In this document: in pieces, positions 25,719-56,687 of the stretch
How positions within the stretch are numbered: the first letter of the stretch is position 1
Layout of the letters: every line of letters begins with the position of its first letter
Assembly: GCA_002269645.1 (NCBI GenBank)
Contig: NIVC01000208.1
Coordinates: forward strand, 186,001 to 250,000
DNA: 64,000 nt
DNA from: Macrostomum lignano
Lineage: Eukaryota
Direction of reading: 5' to 3'
Notes under the pieces: generated by a model
Told to the model about the DNA's origin: nothing
What the model saw: the letters and a program-made list of their open reading frames with translations, nothing else
Database searches by the model: none
Position numbers and translations under genes: made by a program

Positions 25719-26516
25719 TCAGGTCAGATATGCGAAGCCAAGCTGTTGCTGCTGGAGTTGCAACCAAACTTACTGATGCGCAAATTGCCTAAAATTTGAT
25801 TCTAGAGCACTCTGCTCAGCCATTTCCAGTATTCATCAACGTTCAATGAGGCTTTTTAAGTTAAACTAGAGTAGTAGGGAAGATATGCTTTTGCCCTACT
25901 GTCAGTAGTTAAAGCCAGGGAAAATATTCATGGTAGCGTTAGATCGCAAATTTGCGGCTTTCTTATAATTATTTATAAGTTCTTTGTTGTTTTCCTTTAT
26001 TCTGGTTGCCTTGGTAACCAACAAGCTTTAAAGTATTGAGATACTACAGGTATCCACAGTGTGGGCCTTCGGGTATCTCTTGCTTCACTGCGAGTTGGCA
26101 TCTGGGGTGGCCACCTACCTGGCGTTCGGCACTGGCATCAGCAGCAGCATCGCTCTTCGAGCAGGCACTTCTCGGCGGCTCTCGGCTTCGGCGACTCTCA
26201 GCGGCTTTCGGCAGCTCGGCTCGACGGCTCGGCGGCTCAGCTGCGGCTTCAGGCGGCGCCAGGCTTCGCCCAGCGGTCTGCAACCGGCAGGCCGCCGGCC
26301 GGCGGCGCGCGACTTCTGCAACGAGGCACCAGGCAGCTGCTGTATAGGTTTTTTAGTAGCGAAGCAGAATAAGGACATTCTTTTGTATTTAGCCGACCTA
26401 GGCCTACTATTAGTAGTATTATTTGAGTTTTAATTTTATTTATACAGTTTTAAGTTTTAAGTTTTAATTTGTTTTAAGGATTTATCTTGTAACTAGGCTA
26501 CTGTTTTAAAAGCCTT

Positions 26517-27892
26517 ATGGAAGTTGAAAATAGCAGCAAATGGTGCTCACGTGACACTGACTCGCCGCCGTCTGTGTCGACTAAGATCCGGGCAGCGAAC
26601 AATGCTCTCACCCTCAAACGCGCCACTGCCGGAGACTCCGCCTCGAACTGGTACCTCAAAAGGTGAGCGGCCTCCTTCTAAAAGGGATAGAATAGAAATC
26701 TTGAAAGTTGAAGGCGAAACTACCATCATTAGGCTACCGAAACCTGACAAAACTGACAGCAAAGCTTACAACTTACCAAACAACTGCAACATTAGCTATC
26801 ATCCATCAGCTTTAAAAAATTGTGACAGTCAAATTTTGAAGATCCTCACTGATGAGATCCAGGCGAAAGCCTTCCACCACCACACCAACGGTCGACCGGA
26901 AGCCCGGAAGATTGTTTGGTTCGGGCCCGAATACTCGTATGATGGTACCAAAATTAGTGCCAATGACAACTGGCATCCACTCGTCATCAGTCTTGCCACC
27001 TGGCTCAGCGTCGAGTTCCAGCTACCTGTCTTTAACTCCTGTTTGATCAACTTTTATAAAGACGGGTCGATCAACATCCCCTGGCACTCTGATGACGAGG
27101 CAGAGCTAGGGCCTAACCCAACAATAGCATCCATTTCGTTTGGCGCAGCGCGCGACTTTCACATGCGCGCCAAAGGCTCTACTAACATAGCCTGGTCTCA
27201 AAGACTCGCCAGTGGCTCGCTGCTGGTAATGAGCGGTGCTACTCAATCACACCTCCAACACGCGGTCCTCAAGGACCCCAAAGTCAAAGAGCTCAGAGTC
27301 AACCTTACGTTTAGACTCACGCACGACGCCAGATTTCCGGAAGAACTTCCTGTCTCTGCCCAGTCAAACCCTTGTGTGAAACCGATCGAAAACAGCATCA
27401 CTTGCGATCTTGACGATGAGGACTCGGTTCGCCGCAGAGCAGAGCTGGAAACAGAGCTCCAACCGTGCCGCCGCCGCTGCCGCCGCCGCCGCTGCCTCTG
27501 CCGCTAGCGATACCCCACCAGCCGAAGCGCCGGCGAGTCGACCTGCTCTGACCAATCCGGCGGCAATCCAAATCTCCGCCAATCCGCCCACGCTGCCGGC
27601 AGTTGCCTCGGACTCCGTGGCCGCGCCCAATCTAGGAGTTGAAAACGCCAATGACACGCGCAAATCAAGTGAGAGGGGCCTAATCTCCCGGATGGGGGTG
27701 CTCGAGGTTGTACTTCAGGCACTCACTCGGCTCATGGGCACTAATCCGGGGCAGATGCTCACTGAATGGGAAGCGGGGCAACTCGCGATCCAGGCAGTGA
27801 CTGAAGTCCTGGCAGCACTCAGGAATCGAAGGGGACCTGATTCAGGGACAGGGGACACCGAAGCCGCGCAAGCGGGCGGAGGTGAAACCTGA
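26517..27892 (+). pseudogene. Copy 1 ORF1: N-terminus + AlkB (2OG-Fe(II) dioxygenase, ALKBH2/3-like) + C-terminal helical domain; frameshifted
   Basis: ATG 26517 (MEVENSSKWCSRDTDSPP, homologous to copy 4 start); NSCLINFY, WHSDDE (27082), QHAV, RVNLTFR (27295-27315); C-terminus in ORF 27410-27892. Confidence 0.88.
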
Positions 27893-27923
27893 ACCTGACA
27901 ATTAAATTACGTTTAGCGTTAAC

Positions 27924-30385
27924 TTGATATCAAATTTAAACTCATCTAATAATTCCCCTGATAATAATGGGCCGGGTAAACAGTCTGTTGTGCGGGACAC
28001 TCTGAACATTGGACATCTCAACTGCAACGGGCTTAGCAACAAATTCTATGAGATAATATCCTGGATCAACAAAGAAGACTTAGACATTGGGCTTTTCTCT
28101 GAAACATTCCTAGAGAAAAAAATAAATTTTACTTACCAGGGTATGCCACGCTCCGGTTTGACGTCCCTAACTGTAGAAGAGGACTTGCAGTTGTCTATAA
28201 AAATCATTTAGAAATTATGAATGTTGAAAAAATTTTTGACAACTGCAACCACGAGCTTATCACTTTTGAAGTTCATCTTAAAAATAACAAACTTAAGCAA
28301 TTTAACGTGGTCCTCTTCTACAGGAACCCGACTCCAACACGGCTTAACACCCAACTTCTTGACCATTTATTCTCTAATCCCTCGACCTTAGTTGTCGGGG
28401 ACTTTAACTGCAACCACCCAGCCCTCGGGGGTGACTCCCAAACTAACTATCCTGGCAAGCAGCTGTTTGATAGGCTTGACTCGCATCCAAACCCACCAAC
28501 CATTCTTAACGATTATGGGGACTGTACCAGAGTCAGCTACCGTAGTGGCTCAGTCCTTAGGAACGTGCTTGATCAAAGAATTTGTTCCCCGGAGCTAATT
28601 AAACATACCAGCAACGTTATTGTGGGAGAAGATCTAGATAGCGACCACCTCCCCATTATCATTAAAATTTATTTAGATCCTGACTGTAAACTGAGCAAAA
28701 AACCCACTAAAAGCTTTTGGAACACTGACTGGGAAACCTTTAGAGGGACCCTTCAGGATAAACTTAGCAACCATCAGCTTCTCAGTCGCAGATTCTCCAC
28801 ACCTGAGGACCTAGACAAAGCGGTTGATCTGCTAAATCAGTGCATTCATGACACCATTGAGGATGTTGTACCCAACCGGGGCCCTAGGGAACAGCTTCCC
28901 CAAGATATTATTAACAAAATTAAGCATAGGAGGAAACTTAGAAAATTATTCAAAAAAACTAGAATAGACGACTTCAGGGTTCAAGCCAATCAAGCAGCTA
29001 AAGAAATTCGAAATGCTATACGCATGCATAGATATAGGAAATTCGAGGATCTATGCCACAAAGTTGCCGAAAATAGTTATAAAAAGGAACCCAAAAAATT
29101 TTGGATTGACATCAAAAAGATGACAGGAGAAAGGTCCAAAATGATCAACTATCCCCTTCTAGTCTACAAAGATTCGCATGCCGAGACTGAGGCAGAAAAA
29201 GCTTCACTCTTCAGCGACTTTCTTAAAGATCAAATGCAATCTCACCCCAACCACGACTCGCTAATCTATGAAAAGGTCAGTAAGTACAAAGATCATGAGA
29301 TCTTCAAAACCCATAACAATATAATTGCGGCACTTTCATACCATAAAGAGCACGCGAACCCAGATAATCTAGATAAAGAAGATATCGAAAACGATATCCT
29401 TAACATTACTGACCAGGACGTGCTCTGGGAAAGCAGAAAACTTAGGTCAGGAGGAGCTCACGGTCCGGATAGAATTCCTAACATGGTTTTGAAATATGGT
29501 CTCGGCCCAGACTCCATCAGAGCGCTCGCAAAAATTTACAACTCTAGTTTTCTCATAGGATACTTCCCTAAACAATGGAAAAAGGCCATCATTAGGATGA
29601 TCCCTAAACCAAACAAATCCAAAAATCTCGTGGAAAGCTATAGACCCATCAGCCTAACATCAGCCAAAGTCCGCTTTAGTCAGTTCGCTGACGACTTAGC
29701 AGTATGGGCCTCTGCCACAAAATCTACGATGTCCGCTAAAAGGCTTAACTCCTACTTTATTGTCCTCAAAAAGTGGCTTGACAATTTGGGCATTGTCATC
29801 AATCCCTCCAAAAGCAAAGCCATTTCCTTTTTCAAAGCTAATGGGAACAAGACAGGTCCAGACGATCCTCCAATTAAACTTGGACAAGACAAAATCAAGT
29901 ACTATGATTCCGTCACCTTCCTAGGGATGGTTCTTGACAAACAGCTTAACTTTAGGGCCCATATCGACAAGGTAGCTGGGTCTTCGACAGCCAAAATGGC
30001 TGCCCTAGCTAGGATAGCTAAGAACTCCAGGATTTCGCAACTGGCTCTTCGCCTCATCTATAGATCTTACATTGAAAGCACAATGACTTACGGCGCTCCG
30101 GTGCTCATCAATCTACTGGCTTCCCTGGTTAACAAGCTACAAATTCTGCAAAATAAGGCTCTTCGCCTCTCTATAGATGCTCCGCCTTATACTAAAATCA
30201 CATACTTACACCAGGTCACAAAGATTGACATCATGGTTCAGGATCGACTCCTCTATCTTGCTAAAAAATGGTACAAAAAAGCCCTGGAGAGTGAAATCCA
30301 TGGGTTCAAAAATGACACCAAAGAATGGGCCAGGCCAGGGTTCAGGGTCCCCTTTACTACTAAACTCAGACAAATTACGAGATGA
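27924..30385 (+). pseudogene. Copy 1 ORF2: APE endonuclease + reverse transcriptase (internally deleted), one frameshift ~28135
   Basis: IGHLNCNGL, FSET, VGDFNC, SDHLP; GPDRIPN, YRPISLTS joined directly to KVRFSQFADD (29684); FLGMVLD; LQNKALR. Confidence 0.92.
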
Positions 30386-32146
30386 TTAACGCTAATGTGA
30401 TTCATTCTAAAACTCGAGCGCCTCTGTCCGGGGTCGGGAATACTAATGATACTCGTAATGCTATGCTAACCACTTGTCATTCAAAGTACAGTACCAATCA
30501 CACCCTGTTTTTACGTTTATACCCTCTCACAGTATTATCTTTTATACCCTTTCTCTAGCAAGTTTTACATTATACACCCAAAATGTTGTTTATTGTGGGG
30601 CCAGGTCCACTAACTATCATTATAACTAAGACAGAATATCTGAATGTTGGACTTACCGGTTGGGCTTGCTTTGTTGGGATGCTGTTGAATAGTTTGCAAA
30701 ACCCTTGCAAACAACTAGAGGTACAAATAGGGGTAGGGACCTCTATACTTACGACATTCACTATGTCCTCCCAGGAAATCCTTCGTTTTCGTAAGGTTAA
30801 CTAACATAGGCAGGTTCCTATATCATAGCGGTGTCTACCTACTCTCAATAGTAGTAAATAATCTGGCCTCAATTTTTATACCAAAACACTCAAAACATTA
30901 TTGCTTTGTGATTCACTGTACATATTTACACCCCAATATTTGTTTTAGTTTTATCAATCATATTTATTTATATTTATTTGTTTTACTCAATACTTCAACC
31001 ATCTGCTTTAAATTGTCTCTATATTGATTAATTGAACCCTTTTATTTGTTTTAAGTTTTTAAATGTAATTATTGTATTATTTATTAGAAAATATTTGTTT
31101 TATTTCTCCAACTCGAACAAAATACTAAATGTATCGCTCAAACTGGAAACCAAAAAAATAAATTAGTTGCGTAAGAGCCCTCCCCAGGGCTGATGCGCAG
31201 GGCCCCTTGACAGCCCCTACTTACCAAATGAAAAATAGTTTTCCTTTATTCTTCCCCTCCCCAAGCCTTGCGCGCACTGCCGTCGTCCCGGCCGGTCTGA
31301 TTACTGCTCTAAATTCGCTTCAAAACTACCTAAAGTAAGTTCATTGTAAATTCTGTCTTCACTTCTATATTAATAAATTTATTTTTCTTCTCGTTTTCCT
31401 GGGCCTTTAGTATGTCTTAGGGACTTTTTCTCTAGTTAGCAACCTCTTTTGCTCTCTATTTATTTTAATTCGGGTTCTTAAGCTTTAGGGATCCTCTTCA
31501 CGGGTTGGGTCTAGGACGCGCTGTCCTCTGAGTTAGCTTAGCGTTTTTATTTAATTCCTTTTTTTGCTCAATTCTTTGGCTTCGGCCTGGGGGAACCCCT
31601 GCTCAAATTTTTTCTTAATTCGTCTCTTTTTGTGCATTTTTGCAAAATTTACTAGCAATTTGCATTTACACTATTTTTGAACCTTAGTAGTCTAAATTAG
31701 GTATTACTATCTTTTCTTGTGTTAGCACATCAAAATTCTCTAAATTTTTTCTAATCTATTTCCTCTAATTTAGGAACTTCTCTCTTTTTGCCTTCTTCCT
31801 AGATCATTAGTCAGTAAGGTTTTTTTGCTATTCTTTGCCTTCTTTATCTAAATTAATTATTTCGATCTATAATTTACTTATATTTAAATCACCGGTTTTC
31901 CTTTTCTTCTTCATTATTCTAAACGAGACAGTGCGTGTAGGGCTTGCGGACGATATTAACCCGCTCTGACAATTGCTTGAACTGCTGACATTTACCTTGA
32001 ACTGATTTATTATATTAAATTGCTTTACATTTATTTAGAACTGCCCCTGTTTTACTAGTTTTATAGCTAATTGGTCTCCCTGTTTTATATTGACCACTCA
32101 TCTACCTCCATTAGAATACTGTTTTAATTAGTTAACTAGCATTGTC

Positions 32147-34210
32147 ATGAGCACTATCAAAGAAACTGACATCACCGATAACAGGAAGAGGCCAGCGCGA
32201 GACACCTCGTCACCAGCTACTGCTGCTCCTACTAAAAAGCCTAACATGCGAGCCTCAGCTGGACCTACCGACAACAGAGCAACACCGGCCAGACGGACAT
32301 CTCTGCCAGATGCCTCTCCAGGATCAGCTGATGGCGGCTCTGCTTCCAGGCAGCCTCCGGCAGCGTGTTCAAGCCTGAAATACGACATAAACAACTTGGC
32401 AATTTTAAGCATTCCCAAGCCAGACAGGACTAATGAAAAAACTGTTACTCTACAGCAAAACTGCATCATCACTTATGCGCCGAACGCGGTAAAAAGCTCA
32501 GAAACCACTCTCTTCAACATAATAATGAAAGACATCGCTCCAAGTGCCTACCACCACCACTCAAACGGAAAACCGGAGGCCCGTCAGATCGCCTGGTTTG
32601 GGCCCAGCTACACCTACGGTGGATCAAAAATCGAGGCCAATGACAACTGGCATGCTGCAATAGTTCGACTAGTCACGTGGCTCCACCTCGAATACAAACT
32701 GCCACTATTCAATTCCTGCCTAGTTAATTTTTATAAAGACGGCAACATCGGTATTCCTTGGCACTCTGACGATGAAAAGGAACTTGGAGAGGATCCGATC
32801 ATCGCCTCAGTGTCACTCGGAGCCGCCCGAGACTTTCAAGTTCGCTCAAAATCTTCTCCAACTAACATAGTATTTTCGCAAAAGCTAAGCAGCGGCAGCC
32901 TCTTAATAATGAGCGGTGGCACTCAGCCTTATCTACAACATACCGTACCTAAAGATCCCAGATGCAAAGATATGCGAATCAACCTAACATTCCGATTAAC
33001 TAAAGACGACAGAATCTCCGCCGCGGACACTCCAACGCCTAATCCGTGCGTCCGGTTCACACAAGACCAAATTTCTTGCGACCTGGACGACGAGGAATCC
33101 ATCAGGCGAAAAGCAGAAGAGGAGGCCGCCAACTTGGAAAAAATTAAGCTAAATTCTACAATCAAGGACTCCAAAGCAAAATCAGGCAGCAAAGTGGCAG
33201 ACGCCTCTCAGGCAGTCACAGCTCAAGCGAATCCTCAAGCATCAAGCAATCAAACCAAGGCATCAAGCAATCAAAATCTAGCAACACAGCAATCAAGCAT
33301 TCAAGACACAGCTACTAAGCAAACCAATAACCAAGGCGTTGAACAACAACCAAGCAACCAAAGCACCCAGCAACAAACAGAAAAAAGTATACCGGCAGCC
33401 AGTACAGCTGACCAGGCAACCAACAACAACAAAGCTAACCAAGAAGAAAAAGAAAAAACACGTAGAACGTAGACGTAGAAATTAAAATGTGCCAACTGCA
33501 GTGGTGAGCACACGTCGTATTCTCACAAATGCCCAGTAGCTATTAGGGCACATCGCCTGGCAACTGAAAGGGAGCGCGAGAGGGTGCACAGTCTACGACA
33601 ACAGTACGACTACGACTGATATCAGCAAAACTTACCAGAAGCCTTTCCGAGGCCGCAACAGTTCTCCTACTCTGCAGCAGCAAGCCGATCAGCTGTGACA
33701 AGCCAACTGCCTCCAATGTACAACGCGTGCCCGGCTGGTCCCCCTGCGGCGGTCTCGGCGATGGCCTCTGCAGCGGTTGACCCGGCAACCGAGCCTGCAT
33801 CCCACCCCGCGGCGGTCCAGGCGATGGCCTCCGTGGAGGTCGTCCCGGTTCTGGCCCCTGCAGTGGCTCAGGCGACAGCCCCTGCAGCGGTGGCCTCAGG
33901 CGCGGGGTCAGCATCGACTGTTAACCAGACCGAGCCGGTGACCTACGGACCGAAGGCGAGTTGGGCCAAACCAAATTATGCGGCCACCAATTATAACCAT
34001 ACCAAAAACAGTAGCTCAAAAATTTACTCACAAACAGATATTCTCAGGCTGGCCATGAGGGCCTTGAGTAGCATCCTGGAGATGGGCTCGGGGCTTCTCT
34101 GCGACGCACAGATTGCGGGGGAACTCGCAGTCCACGTTGTCATTGAGGTCCTGGGCTCACTCTCGGAGCTACAGGGTCAGGGAGCTGATGGTGGGGCAGC
34201 TGCATGGTAA
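32147..34210 (+). pseudogene. Copy 2 ORF1: AlkB + Q/S/T linker + single remaining CCHC knuckle + C-terminal domain
   Basis: Open 441-aa frame with WHSDDE (32762), QHTV, RINLTFR; then KCANCSGEHTSYSHKC (~33485); C-terminus in ORF 33695-34210. Confidence 0.9.
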
Positions 34211-34263
34211 GCTGTTCACCTTCAGGCCCCGAACTACTTGTTACCTGAAACTTAAGAGCGCGC

Positions 34264-37158
34264 ATGTCAGTGTGTGACAGTAACAGTCACAGCTCAGTTA
34301 CCAAGAATGGTTCGAGGGTAAACAACTGCTCTACTACGCTGAAAGTGGGGCATTTAAACTGTAACACGATTTCAAATAAGCTGCATGAGGTTATAGGGTG
34401 GGTTCGAGACGAAAACATTGATATAGGCCTTTTTTCCGAGACCTGTCTGACCAAGGACAATAATTTCTTCATACAGGGATACGCCATCCTGAGACTAGAC
34501 GTTCCAGACTGCAGGCGCGGGCTTGCCATTGCTTACAAGAGTCATCTTATTATTGACGGGGTTAAAAAGTATTTTGATAGTCAAACTCATGAGTATATCA
34601 AGTTTTCAGTGCATCTCCCTGGCAACTCTTTCAGGAAGTTTGATATCACGCTGTTCTATAGGGCCCCCGGGCTCCCCGACTGTCTTAAGACGGATCTGCT
34701 TGAGCAGTGTCTATCCTCCCCATACTCCCTTCTGTTAGGAGATCTCAACTGCAGGCATGGGTTTCTTGGTGGTGATAGTGCTCAAAATTACCCTGGGAGG
34801 CAGCTTTTTGATTGGCTCGATTCGCATGCGGATCCCCCTGTCGTTCTCAACAAGTTCGGGGATTACACGCGGATCTATAACCGCTCTGGTAAAAACCTAG
34901 GCAATGTGATTGACCTAGCTATGTGCACTAGCAGGCTAGCTCCCTTCTCCAGTGAGGTCTCTGTGGGTGAAGATCTAGACAGTGACCATCTTCCCATAGT
35001 TGTATCTCTGTCCATTGATCCCGCTTGCCACAAGGCAAAGCTCCCGCTCAAAAGCTTCGGGAAGACTGATTGGGAGTCCTTCAGATTCTCGCTACAGGAC
35101 AAGCTTGACAACATCAGAATTCTAAAATCTGATATCTCTACCCCTGAAGAGATCGACCAAGTCGTGGACAATCTGTCTTCGGCTATCACTGACACCATCA
35201 ATAAGGTGGTCCCTGACAGAGACCCCAGAGAGCAACTCCCACCGGACATAGTTAGAAAAATTAAGCACAGGAGGCATCTTAGAAAATGCTTCAAGAAGAC
35301 TAGGGACGATACGTTCAGGATTCTTGCCAATCAGGCGGCCAAAGATATCAGAGTAGCTATCAAGAATCACAGATACAAAAAGTATGAAGATCTCTGCAAA
35401 AAGATAGCCAAAAATAGTTATCGTCACGAACCACGTCGCGACGATAACTATGGAAGACGTGAAAAAGATGACTGGCGAAGCCAAGAAAAGGATAATCTAC
35501 CCTACACTGAAGCATAATGACGCCACTGCAGAAACAGAGGCTGAAAAAGCGAACCTTTTCAGAAATTTTCTTGACTCCCAAATGCAACCCAAGCCTAAGC
35601 CTGGGACTGAGTACTATAACAAAGTCATCAATGCTCGATCGCGAGAAATCTTCAAGCCCCATGAGGGGATCTTTCAGGTTCTGTCCTACTTTAGACAAAA
35701 CCAGGCTGTTGAGGGCAACAATCAAGAAGTGTCTGAGGCTGACCTTCTTGAGATCATAAACATAGATGTTACAATGGCTATAAGCAGTCTTCGGCTCGGG
35801 GGAGCCCCAGGCCCCGATAAGATCCCCAATGTCGTCCTCAAGAAGGGCCTGAGCCCCAACTCCATCAGGGTGCTTACTAAGCTGTTCAATACTTGCTCCC
35901 TGCTTGGGTACTTTCCCAAAGCCTGGAAAAAGGGAACCATAAAGATGATTCCCAAACCCGACAAACCCAAAGGTCAAATTAACAGCTACCGCCCCATCTG
36001 CCTAACTTCCTGCTTAGGAAAATTATATGAAAAAATACTCGCTAGAAACCTTCGAACCATTCTTGAAAACCGTAACATTATTAGTTCCGATCAATGTGCA
36101 TATCGCCAAGATCACTGCACCTTTGACAATATAGTCAGGATCACAGATGGCGTTCTAAAAATGCTGCAGCTTGGGCAATACACCCTTGGTGTCTTTTTTG
36201 ATGTTAAGGGCGCCTTTGACGGCGTTTGGCATGACTCGCTACGCCTTGATCTTCTCGACAGTGATCTTCCTCACAGCCTCACGAGGTCCATTTCTAGCTA
36301 CCTTGACGACAGAGAAGTGCTGGTCCAGGTTGGGGGGCCCTGAGTGAGAGCCTCAACCCGGCGGCAGGTGTTCCCCAGGGAGGTGTCCTCTCGCCGCTCC
36401 TCTTCCTGGTTTATGTCAACAAAATTCCGCTTCCTGCTGACAGAAAGGTTCGCATTAGTCAGTACGCAGATGACCTGGCCGTTTGGGCCAGCGCCAGAAC
36501 TTCATCACTTTCTGCTAAGCTGCTAAATGCCTACTTCAAGAAGCTCAAAATCTGGTTAGACGAGGTTGGGATAATTATCAACCCAAATAAGAGCAAAGCT
36601 ATTTCTTTTTTCAAGCCCTTGGGCAATCACCGGACAGGACCTGATAGGCCCCCCTTGCTGCTTGGCAATCAGTCCATTCCTTACTATGACTCTGTGCGTT
36701 TTCTAGGAATTATCCTTGATAAACAGCTCACCTTTAAACCTCATCTCATCAAGGTAATTAATTCTGCGCAGAACAAGCTCCTTGCGCTGCAGCGCCTTGC
36801 TAGTAAGACCAAAATCTCCCAGCAGGGGCTTAGACTGATTTATAGGATGTATATTGAGAGCTGCATAATTTATGGCGCTCCAGTCTTGATACACCTCACG
36901 GATGCTCAACTCAACTAGTTGCAGCTGCTACAGAACAAAGCGCTGAGAACGTCACTAGACGCTCCACTGTGCACTAAAATTAGTTACTTACACTACATCA
37001 CCAAAATGCCGATGATCAAAGAGCGCATTTGGAATCTAGCCAAGCGCTGGTACAGAAACACCGAGATGTCTGGAGTACACAACTTCGACCTAGACACCAA
37101 GAAATGGGATAGGAGAGGGTTCAGGATGCCTGCAGTGGCCCGTCTGAGAAATGTCTAA
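34264..37158 (+). pseudogene. Copy 2 ORF2: APE + full RT, no RNase H (Jockey/I-like)
   Basis: VGHLNCN, LGDLNC, SDHLP; YRPICLTSCLGKLYEK, FDVKGAFDGVWH, GVPQGGVLSPLLF, QYADD (36463-36474), FLGIILD; frameshifts ~35440 and ~36340, stop 36916. Confidence 0.93.
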
Positions 37159-38119
37159 TGTGGCACCCATGCTGTGCTTAGGTTCAACTGTGAGCAGTAT
37201 TGTCAAACAAGAGCAATTATTGATTAAAACCTAACAAACTCTTGATGTAATTGTAAAAAAAAATTGAAATCTCAAATAAATCTGTGATAAAAATTTTTTA
37301 CACCAGAAAATATTCATGACAATACATGTATACAATTTTATTGTACAACTAACAATTATTTCATTTTATGCCATTATTCCAAATATTTAATGCCAATATG
37401 CCAAATATTCAATATACAATAACACTGACGCAACTTTGCCTATACCCCTCGCCTCTTTGTGCTCTGCTTCATCTTCTGTCTCTCTCCCGACTTTGAACTG
37501 TACATGTTTTAATCATCTCTACTGTTTTAATTTGTTTTTACATCTCCTCACAATTTCCTTTTTCGATTTGTTCTAATGCCTTCGTTCTCTTCATCTTCGA
37601 TTCACCTTAGTCAGATTTGTTTTATTGCTTCGATTGCTACTTTATACATTATCTGATACACTGTTTTATTTGTTTTATTTTATGCACTTTTTAACAAAAT
37701 ATTGAAATCGAATGTCAATAAAAACTCGATAACCTACAAATACATTGTGGCGTAAAAGCCGAAAAGGCTGAAGCGCCGGGCCTATTTAAGCCCGAATACT
37801 CAACAATGAATGAATGAATGTTGTTTTCCTTTATTCCGTACCTGCTCAACTTGCTTGCTTAACACCGCCTGCTCTACATTGCCTGCTCTACATCTCCTGG
37901 TGCTCTCCGGCTCTACAGCAGCATCGCACTACGTGCAGGTCCTACATCGGTCTTTATCTGCACCGGCGTCAGCGGCTACGCACTGCGTACTGGTCCTACT
38001 TCTTGGTGGCGGCGGCGGCTCGGTGGCTTGGCTCGGTGGCGGCGCCGTCGGCTCGTGCGAGACAGCGGCTTTTAGCGCCAGACTTAACGCTTTCAAAGAT
38101 GCTTGACTGCTTGACTGCT

Positions 38120-40180
38120 TGATCATCAAAGATGTCCTCCCGCAAGCCTTTCACCATCTAACTAATGGTAGACCAGAAAAAAAGAAAAATTGTCTGGTAC
38201 GGCCCGGCATACACCTATTCCGGTGGTAGTCTGGAAGCCAATGAGGCCTGGTACCCGGAGTTAACCAAGCTAGTTACCTGGCTCCACGTCGAACTTGGGC
38301 TACCACTGTTCAACTCCGGCCTAGTAAATTTTTACGAATCGGGGCATGTTAACATCCCCTGGCACGCTGATGACGAGACCGAACTTGGCCCCAATCCGAC
38401 AATAGCCTCTATTTCGCTGGGAGCTACAAGAGAATTAGCCATTAGATCCAAGCAGTCCAAAAACATTGTTTTTAAGCAACCTCTCGAGTCTGGCAGTTTG
38501 TTGGTAATGAGTGGTGCAACTCAGAAATATTTTGAGCACAGCATCTACAAAGACCCTAAAGTAAAAGACATTCGCGTTAATCTCACCTTTCGAATGACTT
38601 CTGAAAATCTGGTCTCCGAGTCTCCAGCGCCCTCGTTGAACCCTTGCGTTCGCCAGTCGCAGGATCTCATCACTCCCACTGATGATCCCACTGATGATCA
38701 AAGTCATCTCTTGCGACCTTGATGACCAAGACTCTATTCGTAGAAAAGCTGAAGAAGAGCGAGTCAACCTAGAGAAAATCAGAAGGGCTAGCCAATCCAG
38801 CATTAAATCCAGCGCCAACAATAGCCAGTCCAGGCAGACCAAATCTGCACCAGTCATCTTCGAAGTCGCCCTGGAAGGAAATGATCCAATATAGTTTGAG
38901 TGGCTGCTAAAGACTAATTTCCGTAACGTAAGAATCAAATCAGTTAAAGATCTGTGCCACTCACCTGGCTACATTGTCCACCCTGAGCATCCCAGGGACT
39001 TCAATACGCTCTTAACAGCTCCAATGAAAATCAGCTCAATTAATGACTTTGAAGTCACCAGGCGCACTGCTGCTAAGAGACCTGTCCACCAAGCTAATGA
39101 CCAGCCGAGGGTTCGAGCCCCCCTCAAATCTCCGAACGTTCTCTCCTTCATTGTCCGTAACGTTCCGCTAGCGGTCGACGTAAGCGGTCTAGCCAAGCAC
39201 CTAAATGACTCTGACCAGCAACTCTCAATAGATGGAGCAGTTAGAATTATCTCCAAACAGACTGGCCAGCCGACTCCCTTCGTAAGGCTATTCACCAAGT
39301 GCCAAAGAGTAGTAGATAGCTGCATCCAACAGGGTATCTACCTAGGATTTGTGAAATATAGATGCGAAGAATCTAATAGTCTCCCGCCCGTCAGAGCTAT
39401 CCAGTGCAAGCGGTGCTCAGGACTCGGTCACCATGAGGCGCGCTGCACAGCAAACTATAGGTGCAACAAATGCGCTGGCAATCATTTCTCAATGGATTGC
39501 CCCAAAGACCAAGTCTTCAAGTGTGCAAATTGCGGCGAAAACCATCCGGCATTCTCATTCAAATGCTCTAAAGTCCGAGAGGCTAACGAATTGGCAACCC
39601 GCAAAGAACATGACCGAATCCGAAAGCAACAACAACAGCTGAGAGCCCATAAGCCAGAAAACAGCCAGACCCTTGGGGAAACCTTCGGCGTCCCTGGGCC
39701 AATCTCCTACGCAGATGCCATGCGTCCGCAGCCGGTTCTCGGGCCAATAGCCTTCTCTAACCGAGCTGCCAAAGCTGCCGAAGCCCAACGAGCATCATTC
39801 CCCGCCTCATCTGCCAATGCTGCCGCCGCCGCCTCAGTCGCCTCAGCCAACCAGAATGCTCTGTCTGATGCAATCAACACATTTGAGCCGCCAACAACTG
39901 CTCCAGCCAATCCGGTCATGATGCATCCAGGAGTTGAATCAACTAACCAAATAGGACCAAGTGAGAGGGGCTTTTTCTCTCGGGAAGATGTGCTCGATGT
40001 AGTGTTACAGGCGCTCGACCGACTCATGAACATTGAACAAGGACGGATGTTCACATCCTGGGAGGCGGGGCAATCGTCTTCCGGGTGGTGTCTGAAGTCG
40101 TTAGGGTGTTCAGGTGTCAAAGAGGGCCTGTTGCTGAGTCAGGGGACACCAAAGTCGTGCAAGCGAACGGAGGTGAAACC
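38120..40180 (+). pseudogene. Copy 3 ORF1: AlkB (N-terminus deleted) - linker - RRM-like - three CCHC knuckles - C-terminal domain
   Basis: WHADDE (38363), EHSI, RVNLTFR; a 37-bp insertion shifts the frame ~38665; ORFs 38682-38894 and 39024-40238 are the same frame separated by one TAG; FIVRNVP, CKRCSGLGHHEARC, CNKCAGNHFSMDC, CANCGENHPAFSFKC. Confidence 0.9.
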
Positions 40181-40272
40181 TGAACTCTCTTTCTATAGTC
40201 TGCTTAGCTCTGCTCTATTAATTCAACTCTCCTCGTAATACTTCTACGACTAAGACTAAAAGTCACTCTGTT

Positions 40273-42620
40273 GTGCGGGACTCCCTCATTATTGGACACC
40301 TGAACTGCAACGGGCTCAGCAACAAAATCTATGAGATAATCTCGTGGCTAAAAAATGAGGACTTAGACATAGGACTTTTCTCTGAAACTGGCTTAGTTGA
40401 CACAAACCCTTTCTTTGTCCAAGACTACGCCATCCTTAGATTTGATAAACCTCACTGTAGAAGAGGCCTCGCAGTTGCTTACAAAAATAATCTAAACATT
40501 ATGAATGTCAAAAAGTATTTTGATAACAGTAACCATGAGTTTATTAGCTTTGAGGTTTTCTTAAAGCATAATAGGCTAAACAAACTTAATATAGTCCTCT
40601 TCTACAGGGCGCCTAACCCTACCAAGCTAAACTGCGACATTCTAAAAAATCTTTTCACAAATTCCTCCACTTTGGTTATAGGGGACTTCAACTGTAACCA
40701 CTCTGCCCTAGGTGGAGACACAAATTACAATTACCCCGGCAGACAGCTCTTTGACTGGCTTGAAAACCACCCCAACCCCCCTATTTTATTAAATAACTAT
40801 GGTGAATTCAGCAGAGTGTGTAATCGTGGCGGCTCCCACACCGCTAATGAGCTGGACTTGGGGCTTTGCTCCCCCAATCTTGGTCCTCACACTAGTGAGG
40901 TTCCCATAGGTGATGACATGGATAGTGACACTTTCCCATCATCATAAAAGTTTACCTTGACCCAAACTGTAAAATTTCGAACCCCCCCCCTAAAAGCTTC
41001 TGGAGCACTGATTGGGAAACCTTCAGGGCTGTTCTCCAGGACAAACTCAGTGATAAACTAATCAACTATCTCAGGTTGGCCACTCCAGCTGAATTAGATA
41101 GGGCTGTAGACCTGCTAACCCAGGGCTTGCACGACACGATTGAGGAGGTGATCCCAAACAGAGATCCCCGCGGACAACTCCCCCCAGACATAATAGCAAA
41201 AATTAAACACAGGAGGAAACTTAGAAAACTCTTTAGAAACACCCGGATTGACCATTTTATGATTCAGGCGAATCAAGCCGCTAAGGAGATCAGGCTCGCC
41301 ATCCGTATGCATAGATATAGGAAGTTTGAAAAGTTATGCAAAAAAATTTCCAAAACCAGCTACCGAAATGAACCAAAATTTTTTTGGATTGATATAAAAA
41401 AATGACGGGGGAAGGTCCTAAACCGATCTCGTACCCCCCAATCGTTCTCAAGGATTCTGTTGCTGAAACTGAAGCTGAGAAAGCACAGGCCTTCAAGGAG
41501 TTCCTTGAGGCTCAGATGCGTCCCTGTCCAGACAGATCCTCCCAGCTCTATAAGAGAATTGAGGCCCAAAAAGATCATGAGATCTACAAACCCCATAACA
41601 TCTTAGCTGCGTTAACCTATCATAAAGACCATGCCGATCCTGATAATCCAGACAAAAAAGACATTAAAGCTGATATTCTCAACATCATAGATCAGGATGT
41701 TCTTTGGGAGAGTAGGAAGCTCAGGGCAGGAGGGGCTCCCGGGCCTGACAAGATTCCGAACATTGTCCTCAAATTTGGCCTGAGTCCAGACTCCATCAGA
41801 GTCCTTGCAAAGATCTTTAATGCTAGCTTCCTCCTTGGATACTTCCCCAAGCGATGGAAAATGGCTACTGTCAAAATGATACCCAAACCAAATAAACCTA
41901 AAAACCTCATTGATAGCTATAGGCCTATCAGCCTTACCTCTTGTTTAGGCAAGCTTTATGAAAAAACCTTAGCATGTCTGCTAAAATACTCAATGACTAC
42001 TTTATCCGACTCAAAAGGTGGCTTGATGCCGTTGGCATTACTATTAATCCCTCTAAAAGTAAAGCAATCTCCTTCTTTAAGGCGAATGGCAACAAAACAG
42101 GCCCGGGTGAACCCCTGATCAAACTTGGGAACAACATAATTAGTTATTATGACACTGTCACCTTTCTTGGAATGGTCCTAGACAAACAACTCAACTACAA
42201 ATCTCATATTAACAAGGTCGTTGGTTCTACCACAAATAAGGTTGCTGCGTTAGCCAGAATGGCAAAAAGAATCTCCCAGCACGGACTAGGACTGATCTAC
42301 AGGTCTTTCATTGAAAGTACCATCACTTACGGTGCTCCCATCCTTCTTAATCTTCCGACTTCCAAGTCAACAGAATTCAGGTACTCTAAAACAAGGCTCT
42401 GCGCATCTCCCTTGATGCTCCGCCTTACATAAAAAACTCTTACATCCACTTGGTCACCAACATGCCCATGATCAAATATCGCCTACTTAGCCTAGGGAAA
42501 AATGGTTCAAAAAGCGTTAGTGGTATTCACAAATTCAAAGATGACACCAAAGAATGGTTGAGACCCGGCTTTCGAGTCCCGGTCACAGCTGCGCTCAGGA
42601 AAAAACTTAATGGCTAATAG
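40273..42620 (+). pseudogene. Copy 3 ORF2: APE + RT with deletion removing the YADD core; multiple frameshifts
   Basis: IGHLNCNGL, IGDFNC; RPISLTSCLGKLYEKTLA joined at 41973/41974 to MSAKILNDYF; FLGMVLD. Confidence 0.9.
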
Positions 42621-43334
42621 CCAGATTCCTCTTAAAACAATATTGGTTGGAACGTCGAAGTCTTCAGCATTGGCTAGGCTGCAAGTTATCGCCTCCCTCA
42701 ACGTACCTGCAAGCCCTTATCTGACTGAGTTGTTATTCACTGAGTGAGTTATATTTATAGGACAAAGTTTGACTCGACTAGTTTTTGATTACATTATATA
42801 TATTTGCCGAACCTCTCTCCGGGAGAGAATCCAACCTTTACTGCAGGCGTATTCTAATTGATGACTAAGTATTAATCCAATGCAATTATTTTTGTATTCA
42901 AATTATTAAGACATCATATTTTTTAAAAATATTGCCAACTGTTTTACCTCATTTTTTCCAATATTGCTAAAAAACTTTTAATTTTGTCCAATATTGCTCA
43001 AATATTTTCTTTGTGTTTTATTCTTTGTTTTTAATCCTAAATTTATAAAAAAATGATCGTTTTAGTTTATTTCTCAAACTCTCAAATTCTTGTTTTACAC
43101 TTGACCTCATCTTTTGTTCCTTTTTATACTAGTATTATTTGTTAATAGCTACCCCAAATATTTGTTTTATGTAAATACTCCTCGATTTTATTTTTTTCCT
43201 AAATTGGACGACTATAACTTCTAATAATTCGAACATACGCGTAAAAATATAAAGTTGCGCAAGAGGCCTTCAAAGGGCTGAGGCGCAGGGCAACATTATA
43301 TTAGCCCCTACTTATTAAAGTAAAAAAAGTAAAA

Positions 43335-45697
43335 GTTGTTTTCATTTATTAATTTTGGCTTTATTTTGTCAACACTTAGTACTAGCATCAATCTGCAATG
43401 GAAGTAGAAGTCAATAGCAAAAGATGTGCCTCTAGAGACACTGACTCGCCGCCAGTCAGCACCAAGAAGGCCAACAACCGGTCCTCCTTCGGTCCAGACC
43501 AGAGGTCCTGTTCTGCGTCCTCCAGCAATGCGCCGACTTGTGTGCAACAGCAGACAGTGACTGAAGAACTTCATGTGGCCAGCGATGGTGAGAGCCAGCC
43601 TGTCAAGAGTAGTAAACTAGCAGACTTAGGAAAAGCAACTAAAATATTGATACTCAGTCTACCAGAACCAGACCTCACAGATGACAAAACTGGCCAGCCT
43701 TTAACTAACTGCAAAATTAGATATCTGCCAAATGCGCTCAAATCTTCTGAAGCCAAGCTAAATAAAATTTTAATGGAAGACATTTATCCAAACTCATGCC
43801 ACCATCTAACCAAGGGCAAGCCTGAGGCCAGGAAAATAGTTTGGTATGGGCTTGAGTACACCTACGGGGTACTAAGATTGAGTGCAACGACGCTTGGCAC
43901 CCAGTCGTCACTCACTTAGCCATTTGGCTTCACGTCGAGCTTAGATTGCCACTAGTAATTCGTGCCTGATCAACTTTTATAAAGATGGATCGGTAGCCAT
44001 CCCATGGCACTCTGACAACGAACCAGAGTTAGGCCACGACCCGACCATTGTGTCGGTGTCGCTGGGAGCTCAGCGAGACTTCCAGCTTAGGACTAAGGGC
44101 CAGAGCCAGAATATAGTCTACTCGCAGAGGCTTGCCAGTGGTAGCATCACGATAATGAGTGGGCTACGCAACGGTTCTTGCAACACTCAATCACAAAGGA
44201 CCTCAAAGTTAAGGAACCTCGAATTAATTTAACATTCAGAGTCACTAGTGATAACAGAATCTTCGACTCACCAGCTTCTTAGCCTGGCAATCCTTGCATC
44301 CAGCTTCCTGAAGAGGCCATCACCTGCGACCTCGATGACGCAGAGTCTGTACGCCGTATGGCCAGGCAGGAGGCTGAAAACATTAGCAAAATTAGATCAC
44401 GTTCCAGCAGTAACTCGAGGCGAAAAGCTAAATCCGACCAAACAGACCAAACTCAACCAGCCAATCAGCGGTCTCAAGCAACCACTCAGCAATCTAAACC
44501 TAACACTCAGCAGTCAGAATCTCAGAAGGTAGCTACTCAGCAGTCAAAGCCAAACACTCAGCAGCCAAACGCAGCCAATCAGCACACACAATCAGGCACT
44601 CAGCAACATTCGTCAAACACTCAGCAGAATCATGCAGCCAATCGGCACTCACAATCAGGCACGCAACAATCACTAGCAGCCACTCAGCCAGGCACTCAGC
44701 AGTCAAAATCAGTTACTCAGCAGTCACAACCAGTCACTCAGCAGTCACCACCAGGCTTACAGCAAACACAACGAGAGACGCAGCAGACACAATCAACCAA
44801 CCAATAAACTAATTTTGCAAACCAGACTCGACAGCCAGCTACGGCTAGCACTGTGAATTCCGTGCAGTCAACTAAACCTAAGCATCCAGACACTCAGCAA
44901 TCAAGCACCCACACTCAGCAGCCTAATAGCTACCATCTGCCAGCAACTCAGCAATCAACCACTCGCACTCAGCAGCCAAGCACTCACACTCAGCAGCCAC
45001 AAGCACGCACTCAGCAGTCAAACTCACAACAATCTAATAATTCTAAATTAACTAAAATTACGCCAGTTGTATTTGAGATGCCCTTTGAGGCCAAGAATCC
45101 TATTAAATTCAAACATTCAAAAAAATTAACTTTCCTAACACTTGCATCGTGTCAGTAAAAGAGCTGTATCATAGCTCAAGATACTACGTATTTACTAATT
45201 CTCCACACGACATGAACAACTTATTGACAACAACACTAAAAGTTAACGAAATTAATGGGCACACTGTCACTAGGCGCCTGCCTCAGGCCAACCGACACCT
45301 CTCATCAGGATGTTTACAAAGTCAAGGGCAACTTACGACACCTGCCTGGAGAACGGCATAAAGCTTGGGCACTGAAATTCCGGTGCGAAGAACCGCACAA
45401 CCTTCCACCGGTCAAGGAGATTCAGTGCCACAGGTGTCAAGGCCTTGGACACACCGAAAGCAGGTGCAACGCCGGTTTTGTGTGCAACGTGTGCCGGGAC
45501 GCACTATTCCGGCGACTGCCCCAAAGATACGGGCTTTAAGTGCGCTAATTGTGGGGGTGAAAACCCGGCGTTCTCCTTCAAATGCCCAAAGGTTCAGCAT
45601 GCAAATGAGAGGCGACTGAAAAAGAGCATCATAGGATTCAACTTTAAGACTTAAATTCGAACAGATGAAAATTAGAACCTACTCAAACACTAGCTGA
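43335..45697 (+). mobile_element. AlkB-carrying non-LTR retrotransposon, copy 4 (ORF1 only; truncated by LTR insertion)
   Basis: 5' motif gttgttttcatttatt; ATG 43398; WHSDNE (44008), LQHSI, RINLTFR (44220-44240); Q/S/T linker; CHRCQGLGHTESRC, CANCGGENPAFSFKC; frameshifted. Confidence 0.88.
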
Positions 45698-46074
45698 TGT
45701 AGTGAGCCGCTAGTTTATGGTTAGGCGTCGCCCTTGTCAGCTGTTCCCTCGCCCTCGCCCTGGGTTGCTGTCTGCCGCTGGTCACTTCCCTTAGGCTAAG
45801 GTCGCCAGCCAGTCGCTCGTCTCTCGCTCAGAGCTTCGGCTGTAGCTCTCGTTTGCTCCCGCCGTTTTCCCTGTCTTGGAGCAAGTCAATGACACCTTGC
45901 GTTCTTTGAACTTAAAGTGCAGTAAACATGTTTACTCACTCGTTCTGTACCTGAGTCAATGCTTTCATCCCTTCCTAAGGAGGGATCACTCTGAAAAATA
46001 GCAACTGTCACGCCGCGTATCTGGCCAGGGTAGGACTCAGCTAAAAATAGCAAAATTCACGAGGTCTCGCGCGC

Positions 46075-56682: not shown

Positions 56683-56687
56683 GCGAG

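What the first reader, a model, noticed from the sequence alone, without database searches (positions are those of the whole stretch)
26517..45697. LINE family encoding an AlkB RNA/ssDNA demethylase fused into ORF1
Seen: four diverged non-LTR elements each begin ORF1 with a 2OG-Fe(II) dioxygenase that keeps the full catalytic set (HxD at 27085, 32762, 38363, 44008; distal H in QHAV/QHTV/EHSI/QHSI; RxNLTFR). AlkB is part of ORF1, not a neighbouring gene: in copy 2 it reads openly into the Q/S/T linker, and in copy 3 one 37-bp insertion and one TAG are all that separate it from the RRM-like and 3xCCHC region. ORF2 (APE-RT) follows. Established: ALKBH2/3-type enzymes remove m1A/m3C from RNA/ssDNA; these lesions block reverse transcriptase; some plant RNA viruses (flexi-/closteroviruses) carry AlkB in their replicase; LINE ORF1p coats the element RNA. 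Inference: the element loads its own demethylase on its RNP to repair or erase methyl marks on the template before target-primed reverse transcription, or to counter host epitranscriptomic silencing. I cannot tell from here whether such elements are already catalogued.
Basis: partly seen in the sequence, partly recalled or inferred. Interest (0 to 1): 0.95.

Follow-up and report, generated by a model that had tools for sequence, protein, structure and literature searches.

The report
LINE retrotransposons carrying an AlkB demethylase
A family of flatworm (Macrostomum lignano) LINE retrotransposons has an ALKBH3-like nucleic-acid demethylase domain built into its RNA-coating ORF1 protein, conserved as strongly as the reverse transcriptase, which suggests the element removes methyl lesions that would block copying of its own RNA.

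Summary
Four + strand APE/RT LINE copies lie exactly head to tail (25989-31237, 31238-37822, 37823-43337, 43338-~47662). Each starts ORF1 with a 2OG-Fe(II) AlkB domain (Pfam E~1e-28) that keeps HxD, the distal H and RxNLTFR.

All four window copies are defective, through ORF1 or RT deletions, frameshifts, a 1.6-kb duplication and a missing ORF2. The architecture still holds, because it recurs elsewhere:
- M. lignano gene models read AlkB, linker, CCHC module continuously.
- Two other M. lignano contigs carry AlkB-ORF1-APE-RT.
- Logan contigs hold intact copies (ORF1 843 aa plus ORF2 948 aa).

Between subfamilies synonymous sites are saturated, yet AlkB dN (0.27-0.58) matches APE and RT. AlkB+ elements form one RT clade (93%), their AlkBs form one clade (86%), and the nearest AlkB-less relatives have a homologous ORF1 without AlkB. 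This points to a single old acquisition under purifying selection.

The domain is closest to human ALKBH3 (TM 0.86). Demethylation of the element's own RNA or cDNA is the best-supported mechanism, but it is inferred and untested. I found no paper describing AlkB in a LINE; Repbase and Dfam could not be checked.

The parts
25989..31237 (+). Copy 1 (P0003-type subfamily), defective. It has lost the linker/RRM-like/CCHC part of ORF1, has an APE frameshift near 28130 and an internal RT deletion.
   Evidence: Junction motif at 25989 and 3' block at 31187. It is 91-97% identical to M. lignano P0003 over residues 1-178 and 579-696 only.
26626..27450 (+). Copy 1 AlkB domain (HSD 27085, QHAV 27256, RVNLTFR 27295)
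   Evidence: Pfam PF13532 E 6.7e-28; motifs; identical to UniRef M. lignano P0001 over this stretch
27999..30385 (+). Copy 1 ORF2 (APE plus RT lacking its central motifs)
   Evidence: Pfam Exo_endo_phos_2 and RVT_1; tblastn
31238..37822 (+). Copy 2 (P0004-type subfamily). It has a ~0.9-kb 5' UTR, an ORF1 missing about 240 codons internally, and two frameshifts in ORF2.
32147..33472 (+). Copy 2 ORF1 as it stands: basic N-terminus, AlkB (core 32555-32995; HSD 32762), then an open Q/S/T-rich linker
   Evidence: ORF of 441 aa; Pfam E 7.5e-28; AF2 pLDDT 85.6 and Foldseek ALKBH3 TM 0.86
33479..34210 (+). Copy 2 remnant of the last CCHC knuckle and the ORF1 C-terminal region
   Evidence: 95% identical to P0004 residues 410-518
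34264..37158 (+). Copy 2 ORF2: APE plus RT (YADD), with frameshifts near 35450 and 36340
   Evidence: Pfam; frame inspection
37823..43337 (+). Copy 3. All ORF1 modules are present, but the N-terminal part of AlkB is missing, there is a 37-bp insertion and a TAG, and ORF2 has several frameshifts.
38119..38695 (+). Copy 3 AlkB domain (HAD 38363, EHSI 38534, RVNLTFR 38573)
   Evidence: Pfam E 7.3e-28
38700..40238 (+). Copy 3 ORF1 nucleic-acid-binding module: conserved mid-domain, a putative RRM-like region, three CCHC knuckles and a C-terminal helix region. TAG at 38893.
   Evidence: Translation; alignment with P0003, P0004 and L001; weak AIR2-type zinc-knuckle match
40237..42602 (+). Copy 3 ORF2 (APE+RT), spread over four frame segments
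43338..47662 (+). Copy 4. ORF1 only: AlkB 43821-44351 with three frame changes (HSD 44008), a Q-rich linker, and the CCHC module at 45054-45627. It has an internal 1.6-kb tandem duplication (44536-46074 / 46105-47662). No ORF2 and no 3' block.
31168..31216 (+). Copy 1 3'-terminal double stem-loop, followed by an A-rich tail that ends at 31237
   Evidence: Conserved block; fold z -2.8; consensus structure of 14 pairs with 1 compensatory change
37749..37793 (+). Copy 2 3'-terminal double stem-loop, followed by an (AATG)n tail that ends at 37822
   Evidence: (z -3.2)
43256..43307 (+). Copy 3 3'-terminal double stem-loop, followed by an A-rich tail that ends at 43337
25989..26002 (+). Junction motif GTTTTCCTTTATTC. 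It also occurs at 31238, 37823 and, as a variant, 43338. It is either the conserved 5' terminus of the element or a duplicated target site.
   Evidence: 6 matches against 0.73 expected by chance; alignment A7

Best explanation
Shown. The region is a head-to-tail array of four decayed members of a lineage of APE-type LINEs of the flatworm Macrostomum lignano. In this lineage the ORF1 protein is a fusion with this order of parts:
1. a short basic N-terminus;
2. a complete ALKBH3-like AlkB Fe(II)/2-oxoglutarate dioxygenase domain;
3. a low-complexity linker;
4. the ancestral ORF1 nucleic-acid-binding module (a conserved mid-domain and three CCHC knuckles).
ORF2 (APE+RT) follows, then a 3' UTR ending in a conserved double stem-loop and a short A-rich or AATG tail. 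AlkB was acquired once at the base of this LINE clade and has since been kept under purifying selection as strong as that on APE and RT, with every metal and 2OG ligand intact.

Inferred. ORF1p is expected to coat the RNA it is translated from. The fusion would therefore place a stoichiometric single-strand-specific demethylase on the element's own RNA and nascent cDNA. There it would remove m1A- and m3C-type methyl lesions, which are hard stops for reverse transcriptases. These lesions could be chemical damage or host-deposited marks. Removing them would raise the yield of full-length target-primed reverse transcription.
For: AlkB identity and fold:
- Pfam 2OG-FeII_Oxy_2 E~1e-28.
- PDB phmmer gives ALKBH3 E 2e-26, better than ALKBH2 at 5e-15.
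- The AF2 model has pLDDT 85.6, and the best Foldseek hit is human ALKBH3-ssDNA 8jnk, TM 0.86.
- H, D, H and both R are invariant in 36 aligned sequences. They are also present in L005, L006 and P0305.

Fusion with ORF1:
- Copy 2 has an open frame from AlkB into the linker.
- M. lignano P0003 (696 aa) and P0004 (541 aa) are continuous.
- L001 ORF1 is at least 684 aa, L006 ORF1 is 843 aa and L005 ORF1 is 688 aa. Each is followed by APE+RT.
- Four more full-length representatives were found, P0161-P0164.

Selection: pS is at least 0.75 (saturated). dN for AlkB is 0.27-0.58, against 0.34-0.45 for APE and 0.20-0.40 for RT. The UTRs cannot be aligned apart from the terminal motifs.

Single gain:
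- The RT NJ clade of AlkB+ elements has 93% bootstrap and excludes L003 and L004.
- The TE AlkB clade has 86% bootstrap.
- L004 ORF1 is homologous to the non-AlkB part and has no AlkB.

Precedent: plant-virus AlkB domains repair m1A/m3C in RNA (PMC2553587), and an orchid Gypsy element encodes an active AlkB-family RNA demethylase (PMC9289625).

From established knowledge, not tested here: ALKBH3 prefers single-stranded DNA and RNA; m1A and m3C block reverse transcriptases, and AlkB treatment is used to relieve this in tRNA sequencing; LINE ORF1p binds its RNA in cis.
Against: - No activity, substrate or retrotransposition data exist.
- All four window copies are dead, so nothing in this window can be functional.
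- Cis-coating by this ORF1p is assumed from other LINEs.
- RRM-likeness of the binding module was not confirmed.
- The trees are NJ on about 200 (AlkB) or 430 (RT) columns, not ML.
- The taxa of the Logan samples are unknown, so the host range beyond M. lignano is not established.
- ALKBH3-like enzymes can also act on tRNA and DNA, so the target need not be the element's own RNA.
Confidence: 0.7

Rival explanations
1. The AlkB domain is catalytic but its target is not RT-blocking lesions on the element's own template. Candidates are m6A or other marks used by the host to silence or destabilise TE RNA, host tRNAs, or alkylated DNA at the integration site (for example 3mC made by DNMTs). On this reading it is counter-defence or DNA repair rather than template cleaning.
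For: The orchid Gypsy AlkB is an m6A eraser (PMC9289625). M. lignano is reported to keep DNMT1 and DNMT3, and DNMTs make 3mC (PMC9246332). The catalytic residues are conserved.
Against: The domain is ALKBH3/ALKBH2-like, not ALKBH5/FTO-like: FTO and ALKBH6 hits are 8 or more orders of magnitude weaker. No data exist on RNA marks in this species.
Confidence: 0.17
2. The AlkB fold is kept as a non-catalytic single-strand nucleic-acid-binding or chaperone module of ORF1p.
For: ORF1 proteins are modular and recruit diverse binding domains. No activity has been measured.
Against: The HxD...H triad and both 2OG-binding arginines are invariant across lineages that are only 38-60% identical. A pure binding module would not need these residues.
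Confidence: 0.08
3. AlkB is a host gene or gene fragment captured locally and then duplicated with the neighbouring LINEs, or a domesticated host gene family. On this reading it is not a component of the mobile element.
For: All four window copies are adjacent and in one orientation. The M. lignano annotation lists them as ordinary 'Fe2OG dioxygenase domain-containing' genes.
Against: The same architecture is found on other M. lignano contigs (L005, L009) and in intact elements from other samples (L001, L006). The RT and AlkB trees agree. The copies are 40-60% identical with saturated synonymous sites, so they are not a recent local duplication. Copies 1 and 2 have relatives elsewhere that are 89-97% identical.
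Confidence: 0.03

Closest known systems
AlkB domains in the replicase of plant RNA viruses (Alpha-/Betaflexiviridae, some Closteroviridae); van den Born et al. 2008, PMC2553587
   Same: A selfish RNA-templated replicator carries its own AlkB-family dioxygenase fused into a replication or packaging protein. The viral domains demethylate m1A/m3C in RNA, which is the activity proposed here.
   Different: Those are RNA viruses with an RdRp, and the AlkB sits inside the replicase polyprotein. Here the carrier is a nuclear APE/RT LINE and AlkB is the N-terminal domain of the RNA-coating ORF1p. The host is an animal. The sequence is closest to ALKBH3.
Phalaenopsis Ty3/Gypsy (Tat/Ogre) elements with an ALKBH5-like ORF (PMC9289625)
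   Same: A retrotransposon-encoded AlkB-superfamily RNA demethylase with shown in vitro activity, interpreted as counter-defence against epitranscriptomic control.
   Different: It is an LTR element, the AlkB is a separate extra ORF, it belongs to the ALKBH5 (m6A eraser) clade, it was acquired recently and it occurs in plants. Here it is a non-LTR element with an in-frame ORF1 fusion, ALKBH3-like, and the acquisition is old (synonymous sites are saturated between subfamilies).
Human ALKBH3 (PDB 2IUW, 8JNK) and ALKBH2
   Same: The fold matches (TM 0.86 normalised to ALKBH3), with the same HxD...H iron triad, RxxxxxR 2OG site and N-terminal lid region. Sequence E-value is 2e-26 to ALKBH3.
   Different: Identity is only about 30%. 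The domain is embedded in a 700-960 aa TE protein with CCHC knuckles. The TE AlkBs form their own clade apart from spider ALKBH3 and fish ALKBH2.
Jockey/CR1-type LINEs with a CCHC-knuckle ORF1 (nearest named hits: Drosophila X-element and BS)
   Same: Two ORFs, APE+RT in ORF2, ORF1 with three CCHC knuckles, a 3' UTR stem-loop and a short tail.
   Different: No described member has an enzymatic AlkB domain in ORF1. Clade assignment rests only on the names of database hits and was not tested against reference RTs.
LINE ORF1 proteins with an enzymatic domain (SGNH esterase ORF1 of CR1/L2-type elements; own knowledge)
   Same: This is a precedent for an enzyme fold within ORF1p.
   Different: That enzyme class is a lipolytic esterase, not a nucleic-acid dioxygenase.

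Membership tests
AlkB family (ALKBH2/3-type Fe(II)/2OG nucleic-acid dioxygenase) | Double-stranded beta-helix fold with an N-terminal nucleotide-recognition lid | tested here: met
   AF2 pLDDT 85.6. Foldseek gives 8jnk (ALKBH3-ssDNA) E 2.5e-18, about 200 aligned columns, TM 0.86.
AlkB family (ALKBH2/3-type Fe(II)/2OG nucleic-acid dioxygenase) | HxD...H iron-binding triad | tested here: met
   Present in all four window copies at the stated coordinates. Invariant in alignments A1 and A5. Present in L001, L005, L006 and P0305.
AlkB family (ALKBH2/3-type Fe(II)/2OG nucleic-acid dioxygenase) | RxxxxxR 2-oxoglutarate-binding motif (RxNLTFR) | tested here: met
AlkB family (ALKBH2/3-type Fe(II)/2OG nucleic-acid dioxygenase) | Oxidative demethylation of m1A/m3C in ssDNA or RNA | not testable with these tools
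   Needs a biochemical assay of the recombinant domain
APE-type non-LTR retrotransposon (LINE) | ORF2 with an N-terminal apurinic-type endonuclease and an RT | tested here: met
   Pfam Exo_endo_phos(_2) and RVT_1 in copies 1-3 and in L001 and L006
APE-type non-LTR retrotransposon (LINE) | No LTRs; the 3' end has a tail or a stem-loop | tested here: met
   Self-BLAST shows no terminal direct repeats. There is a conserved 3' double stem-loop plus an A-rich or (AATG)n tail.
APE-type non-LTR retrotransposon (LINE) | Target-site duplications flanking individual insertions | tested here: inconclusive
   The copies abut one another. The 14-nt junction motif could be a 5' terminus or a duplicated target. 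The 3' end of copy 4 is missing.
Jockey superfamily/clade | RT groups with reference Jockey-clade RTs | not tested
   The only evidence is names of database hits, 'transposon X-element' and 'BS', at 30-34% identity. No reference RT set was available.
Jockey superfamily/clade | ORF1 with PRE_C2HC plus CCHC knuckles | tested here: inconclusive
   Three CCHC knuckles are visible, and zf-CCHC is weak in L001 and P0164. There is no PRE_C2HC Pfam hit in these ORF1s, only in distant hits P0160 and P0165.
Viral AlkB (Flexiviridae replicase) | AlkB embedded in an RNA-virus replicase with methyltransferase, helicase and RdRp | tested here: not met
   The neighbours are the ORF1 CCHC module and APE/RT. 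No RdRp or helicase is present.
Orchid Gypsy ALKBH5-like elements | LTR retrotransposon with a separate ALKBH5-clade ORF | tested here: not met
   No LTRs are present. The domain is ALKBH3/2-like.

The most novel reading that the evidence does not exclude
A whole clade of animal LINEs carries an active single-strand RNA/DNA demethylase as part of ORF1p. AlkB of the same clade also occurs in a 1012-aa ORF upstream of an ORF with weak RT and GIY-YIG matches (a Penelope-like layout, not verified). On this reading, base methylation of retroelement RNA or cDNA (m1A/m3C, as damage or as a host mark) is a significant barrier to reverse transcription in vivo, one that retroelements have evolved to erase. 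The same lineage also builds exact head-to-tail arrays, which hints at an unusual integration or template-jumping mode.
Probability: 0.4. Interest if true: 0.85.

Novelty: new variant of a known kind. Interest (0 to 1): 0.75.

Why it matters
LINE ORF1 proteins are regarded as RNA chaperones and coats. An in-frame nucleic-acid repair or demethylation enzyme, conserved as tightly as the RT, would be a new functional class of LINE accessory domain. I know of no earlier one in an animal retrotransposon.

It is a third independent case of an RNA-templated replicator acquiring an AlkB-family domain, after plant RNA viruses and an orchid Gypsy element. That supports the view that methylated bases in template RNA impose a general fitness cost on such replicators.

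It also gives a natural, genetically tractable test. M. lignano has transgenesis, so one can ask whether m1A/m3C limits reverse transcription in vivo by comparing wild type with an HxD mutant.

There is a practical consequence too. These TE genes are annotated as ordinary 'Fe2OG dioxygenase' host genes, and they could distort presence/absence surveys of ALKBH2/3 in flatworms.

Tried and rejected
- Exact-sequence look-ups of the copy 2 ORF1 and of P0003 found nothing, so the window's own record could not be placed. The species was inferred from P0001, which is identical to copy 1 over the AlkB stretch.
- A profile word-search with the non-AlkB ORF1 module returned only 3 proteins, probably because low-complexity words swamped the candidates. 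The exhaustive HMMER search was what found more members.
- AF2 of the ORF1 binding module failed (4 sequences, pLDDT 38). A PDB profile search gave only weak AIR2-type zinc-knuckle hits. 'RRM-like' therefore remains unverified.
- Rfam found nothing in the window.
- A Biopython bootstrap timed out and was replaced by my own NJ bootstrap.
- A telomeric HeT-A/TART-like array was considered for the head-to-tail arrangement. I did not adopt it. The array is flanked by other TEs and microsatellites on both sides. The same lineage also forms arrays at other internal positions of large contigs (L009).
- I considered that the RT+RNaseH ORF at 48209-51109 might be copy 4's ORF2 and rejected it. It is only 28-40% identical to the family's RT, against 52-69% among copies 1-3. 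It is also GC-rich and lacks an APE.
- Literature searches for AlkB or a dioxygenase in LINE or non-LTR ORF1, and in M. lignano TE papers, found no description.


Full report
**1. Observation**

The region holds four + strand non-LTR elements.
- Pfam finds 2OG-FeII_Oxy_2 at E about 7e-28 in the ORFs at 26524-27507, 32147-33472 and 38165-38722. It also finds Exo_endo_phos(_2) and RVT_1 in the ORFs that follow.
- tblastn with the copy 2 ORF1 finds a fourth AlkB spread over three frames at 43401-44618.
HSD, HSD, HAD and HSD sit at 27085, 32762, 38363 and 44008. The distal-His motifs and R[IV]NLTFR are where stated.
- The 37-bp insertion and the TAG (38893) in copy 3 are also real.

**2. Anatomy and boundaries**

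Two conserved features mark the element ends.
- The motif GTTTTCCTTTATTC occurs at 25989, 31238 and 37823, and as a variant at 43338. That is 6 matches with up to 2 mismatches, against 0.73 expected by chance.
- A block GGGCTGAnGCGCnGGGC occurs at 31187, 37765 and 43275. It folds into a double stem-loop (z -2.8 and -3.2 for two copies). The consensus has 14 pairs, one of them compensatory. A short A-rich or (AATG)n tail follows.

Each tail runs directly into the next junction motif. The elements are therefore 25989-31237, 31238-37822, 37823-43337 and 43338-~47662, exactly head to tail.

All four copies are defective.
- **Copy 1.** It matches M. lignano protein P0003 at 91-97% identity, but only over residues 1-178 and 579-696. 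The linker and CCHC module are deleted. Its RT also lacks the central motifs.
- **Copy 2.** It matches P0004 at 89-95% identity but lacks residues 170-409. It has two ORF2 frameshifts.
- **Copy 3.** It lacks the first ~120 codons of ORF1 and has several frameshifts.
- **Copy 4.** It has three frame changes in AlkB, a 1.6-kb internal tandem duplication (86.6% identity), and no ORF2.

Downstream lie an unrelated 5'-truncated RT+RNaseH LINE, Gypsy-like ORFs and a 50-bp satellite.

**3. Species**

UniRef's M. lignano protein P0001 is identical to copy 1 across the AlkB stretch. NCBI M. lignano gene models PAA54533-5, PAA61448 and PAA49615 belong to the same protein family. The window is therefore M. 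lignano or something practically identical to it.

**4. AlkB is part of ORF1 and part of the element**

- Copy 2 reads openly from AlkB into the linker.
- P0003 (696 aa) and P0004 (541 aa) read continuously. The order is AlkB, Q-rich linker, a conserved mid-domain, three CCHC knuckles and the C-terminal region.
- Logan contig L001 has an ORF1 of at least 684 aa with AlkB and CCHC, followed by an intact 946-aa APE-RT.
- Logan contig L006 has intact ORF1 (843 aa) and ORF2 (948 aa). The same ORF1 protein is seen on four contigs from at least two runs.
- M. lignano contig NIVC01003829.1 (L005) carries a divergent subfamily, with AlkB only 38-39% identical to copy 2, in the same layout.
- NIVC01002892.1 (L009) carries three tandem copies of that subfamily.
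- An exhaustive HMMER search of 1.84 billion representatives adds four more full-length AlkB-ORF1 proteins, P0161-P0164 (757-962 aa).

This rules out local capture followed by duplication.

**5. Selection and history**

Between copies, and between copies and L001, synonymous differences are saturated (pS 0.75-0.88). dN is 0.27-0.58 for AlkB, 0.34-0.45 for APE and 0.20-0.40 for RT. AlkB has therefore been as constrained as the core enzymes, and dN/dS is well below 1. The UTRs cannot be aligned except for the terminal motifs.

The trees point to one old gain.
- In an NJ tree of the RT, the AlkB+ elements form a clade with 93% bootstrap. This clade includes copy 2, L001, L005b and L006, plus two elements whose ORF1 is cut off by contig ends.
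- That clade excludes the AlkB-less relatives L003 and L004.
- L004's ORF1 is homologous to the non-AlkB module (31% identity over 249 aa) but has no AlkB.
- In an NJ tree of AlkB domains, the TE-borne AlkBs form a clade with 86% bootstrap. It is separate from spider ALKBH3, fish ALKBH2 and metagenomic AlkBs.

Together these indicate one old N-terminal addition of AlkB to a pre-existing ORF1, followed by co-diversification. The donor of the domain is unresolved.

**6. What kind of AlkB**

- phmmer against PDB sequences gives ALKBH3 at E 2e-26 and ALKBH2 at E 5e-15.
- The AF2 model (pLDDT 85.6, pTM 0.82) superposes on human ALKBH3 bound to ssDNA. The fit is TM 0.86 over about 200 columns, rmsd 2.3 Å.
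- ALKBH6, E. coli AlkB and FTO score far lower.
- The iron triad and both 2OG arginines are invariant in 36 aligned sequences.

**7. Mechanism**

- **Shown:** a complete, catalytically equipped ALKBH3-type domain is tethered by a flexible linker to the nucleic-acid-binding module of a LINE ORF1p, and it is conserved like the RT.
- **From established knowledge:** ALKBH3 removes m1A and m3C from single-stranded DNA and RNA. These lesions stop reverse transcriptases. LINE ORF1p binds its own RNA in cis. Plant-virus AlkB domains repair RNA (PMC2553587).
- **Inferred:** the fusion coats the element RNA with a demethylase. This clears RT-blocking methyl bases, whether damage or host marks, from the template and possibly from nascent cDNA or target ssDNA, and so favours full-length TPRT.

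I put about 0.55-0.6 on this specific mechanism and about 0.95 on the architecture.

The rivals are a catalytic domain with another target (m6A, tRNA, or DNMT-made 3mC in DNA), a non-catalytic binding module, and a captured or domesticated host gene. The last is essentially excluded.

**8. Comparison and novelty**

TE- and virus-encoded AlkB is known for Flexiviridae replicases (PMC2553587) and for an orchid Gypsy lineage with an ALKBH5-like extra ORF (PMC9289625). Here the carrier is a non-LTR element, the domain is fused in frame into ORF1p, it is ALKBH3-like, it is old, and the host is an animal.

Six full-text searches found no description of AlkB, or any dioxygenase, in a LINE or in M. 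lignano TE papers. Repbase and Dfam could not be queried, so prior cataloguing cannot be excluded. I rate it a new variant of a known kind.

**9. Side findings**

- The lineage repeatedly forms exact head-to-tail arrays. Examples are the window (diverged subfamilies), L005 (two copies) and L009 (three near-identical copies, period ~6.45 kb).
- A TE-clade AlkB also sits in a 1012-aa ORF upstream of an ORF with weak RT and GIY-YIG matches in L008. That is a Penelope-like layout, but it was not verified.
- These TE genes are annotated as ordinary host dioxygenases.

Noticed in passing
window 25989-47662; L005 2435-11414; L009 3103-21208: Members of this LINE lineage lie in exact head-to-tail arrays. 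There are four deeply diverged subfamilies in the window (3' tail abutting the next 5' motif). There are two copies on M. lignano contig NIVC01003829.1. There are three near-identical copies with a ~6.45-kb period on NIVC01002892.1. The AlkB-less relative L003 also shows two same-strand copies. Possible causes are tail-targeted TPRT, RT template jumping or unequal crossing-over.
   Followed up: partly
L008 2120-5158 and 5266-7398 (Logan SRR19430222): An AlkB of the same TE clade, with its catalytic residues intact, sits in the middle of a 1012-aa ORF. That ORF lies directly upstream of an ORF with weak RVT_1 and GIY-YIG Pfam matches, a Penelope-like layout. This suggests the domain is shared between retroelement classes.
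   Followed up: partly
window 25989-26002, 31238-31251, 37823-37836, 43338-43351, 12035-12048: The 14-nt motif GTTTTC[C/A]TTTATT marks every element junction. A fifth occurrence at 12035, identical to the copy 4 variant and preceded by an A-rich run, has no element next to it. It could be an empty target site or chance.
   Followed up: partly
window 44536-46074 and 46105-47662: A 1.6-kb tandem duplication (86.6% identity) inside copy 4 duplicates the ORF1 linker and CCHC module. A 72-bp tandem repeat follows at 47584-47737.
   Followed up: yes
window 48209-51109 (+): An open 966-aa ORF with RT and RNase H but no APE, GC-rich (~63%). It is a 5'-truncated LINE of a different family, only 28-40% identical to the RT of the AlkB family.
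   Followed up: partly
window 50929-57362 (+): A run of ORFs with Retrotrans_gag (weak), RVT_1 and RT_RNaseH matches. It is a Gypsy-type LTR retrotransposon fragment.
   Followed up: no
window 59022-64000; 3953-4924; 5460-7082; 8503-8866: A 50-bp-unit satellite with about 100 copies and strong G over C skew runs to the window end. There are also long (GTTA)n, (GACA)n and (CTGT)n microsatellites.
   Followed up: no
window 17840-19198 (+): A 452-aa ORF with a DUF3504 match. This domain is typical of Crypton- or tyrosine-recombinase-derived proteins (own knowledge).
   Followed up: no
M. lignano annotation (PAA54533.1, PAA54534.1, PAA54535.1, PAA61448.1, PAA49615.1; UniRef P0001-P0003): TE-borne AlkB-ORF1 genes are annotated as hypothetical or 'Fe2OG dioxygenase domain-containing' host proteins. 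A review states that M. lignano retains ALKB2 (PMC9246332). Such presence/absence calls could be confounded by these TE copies.
   Followed up: no
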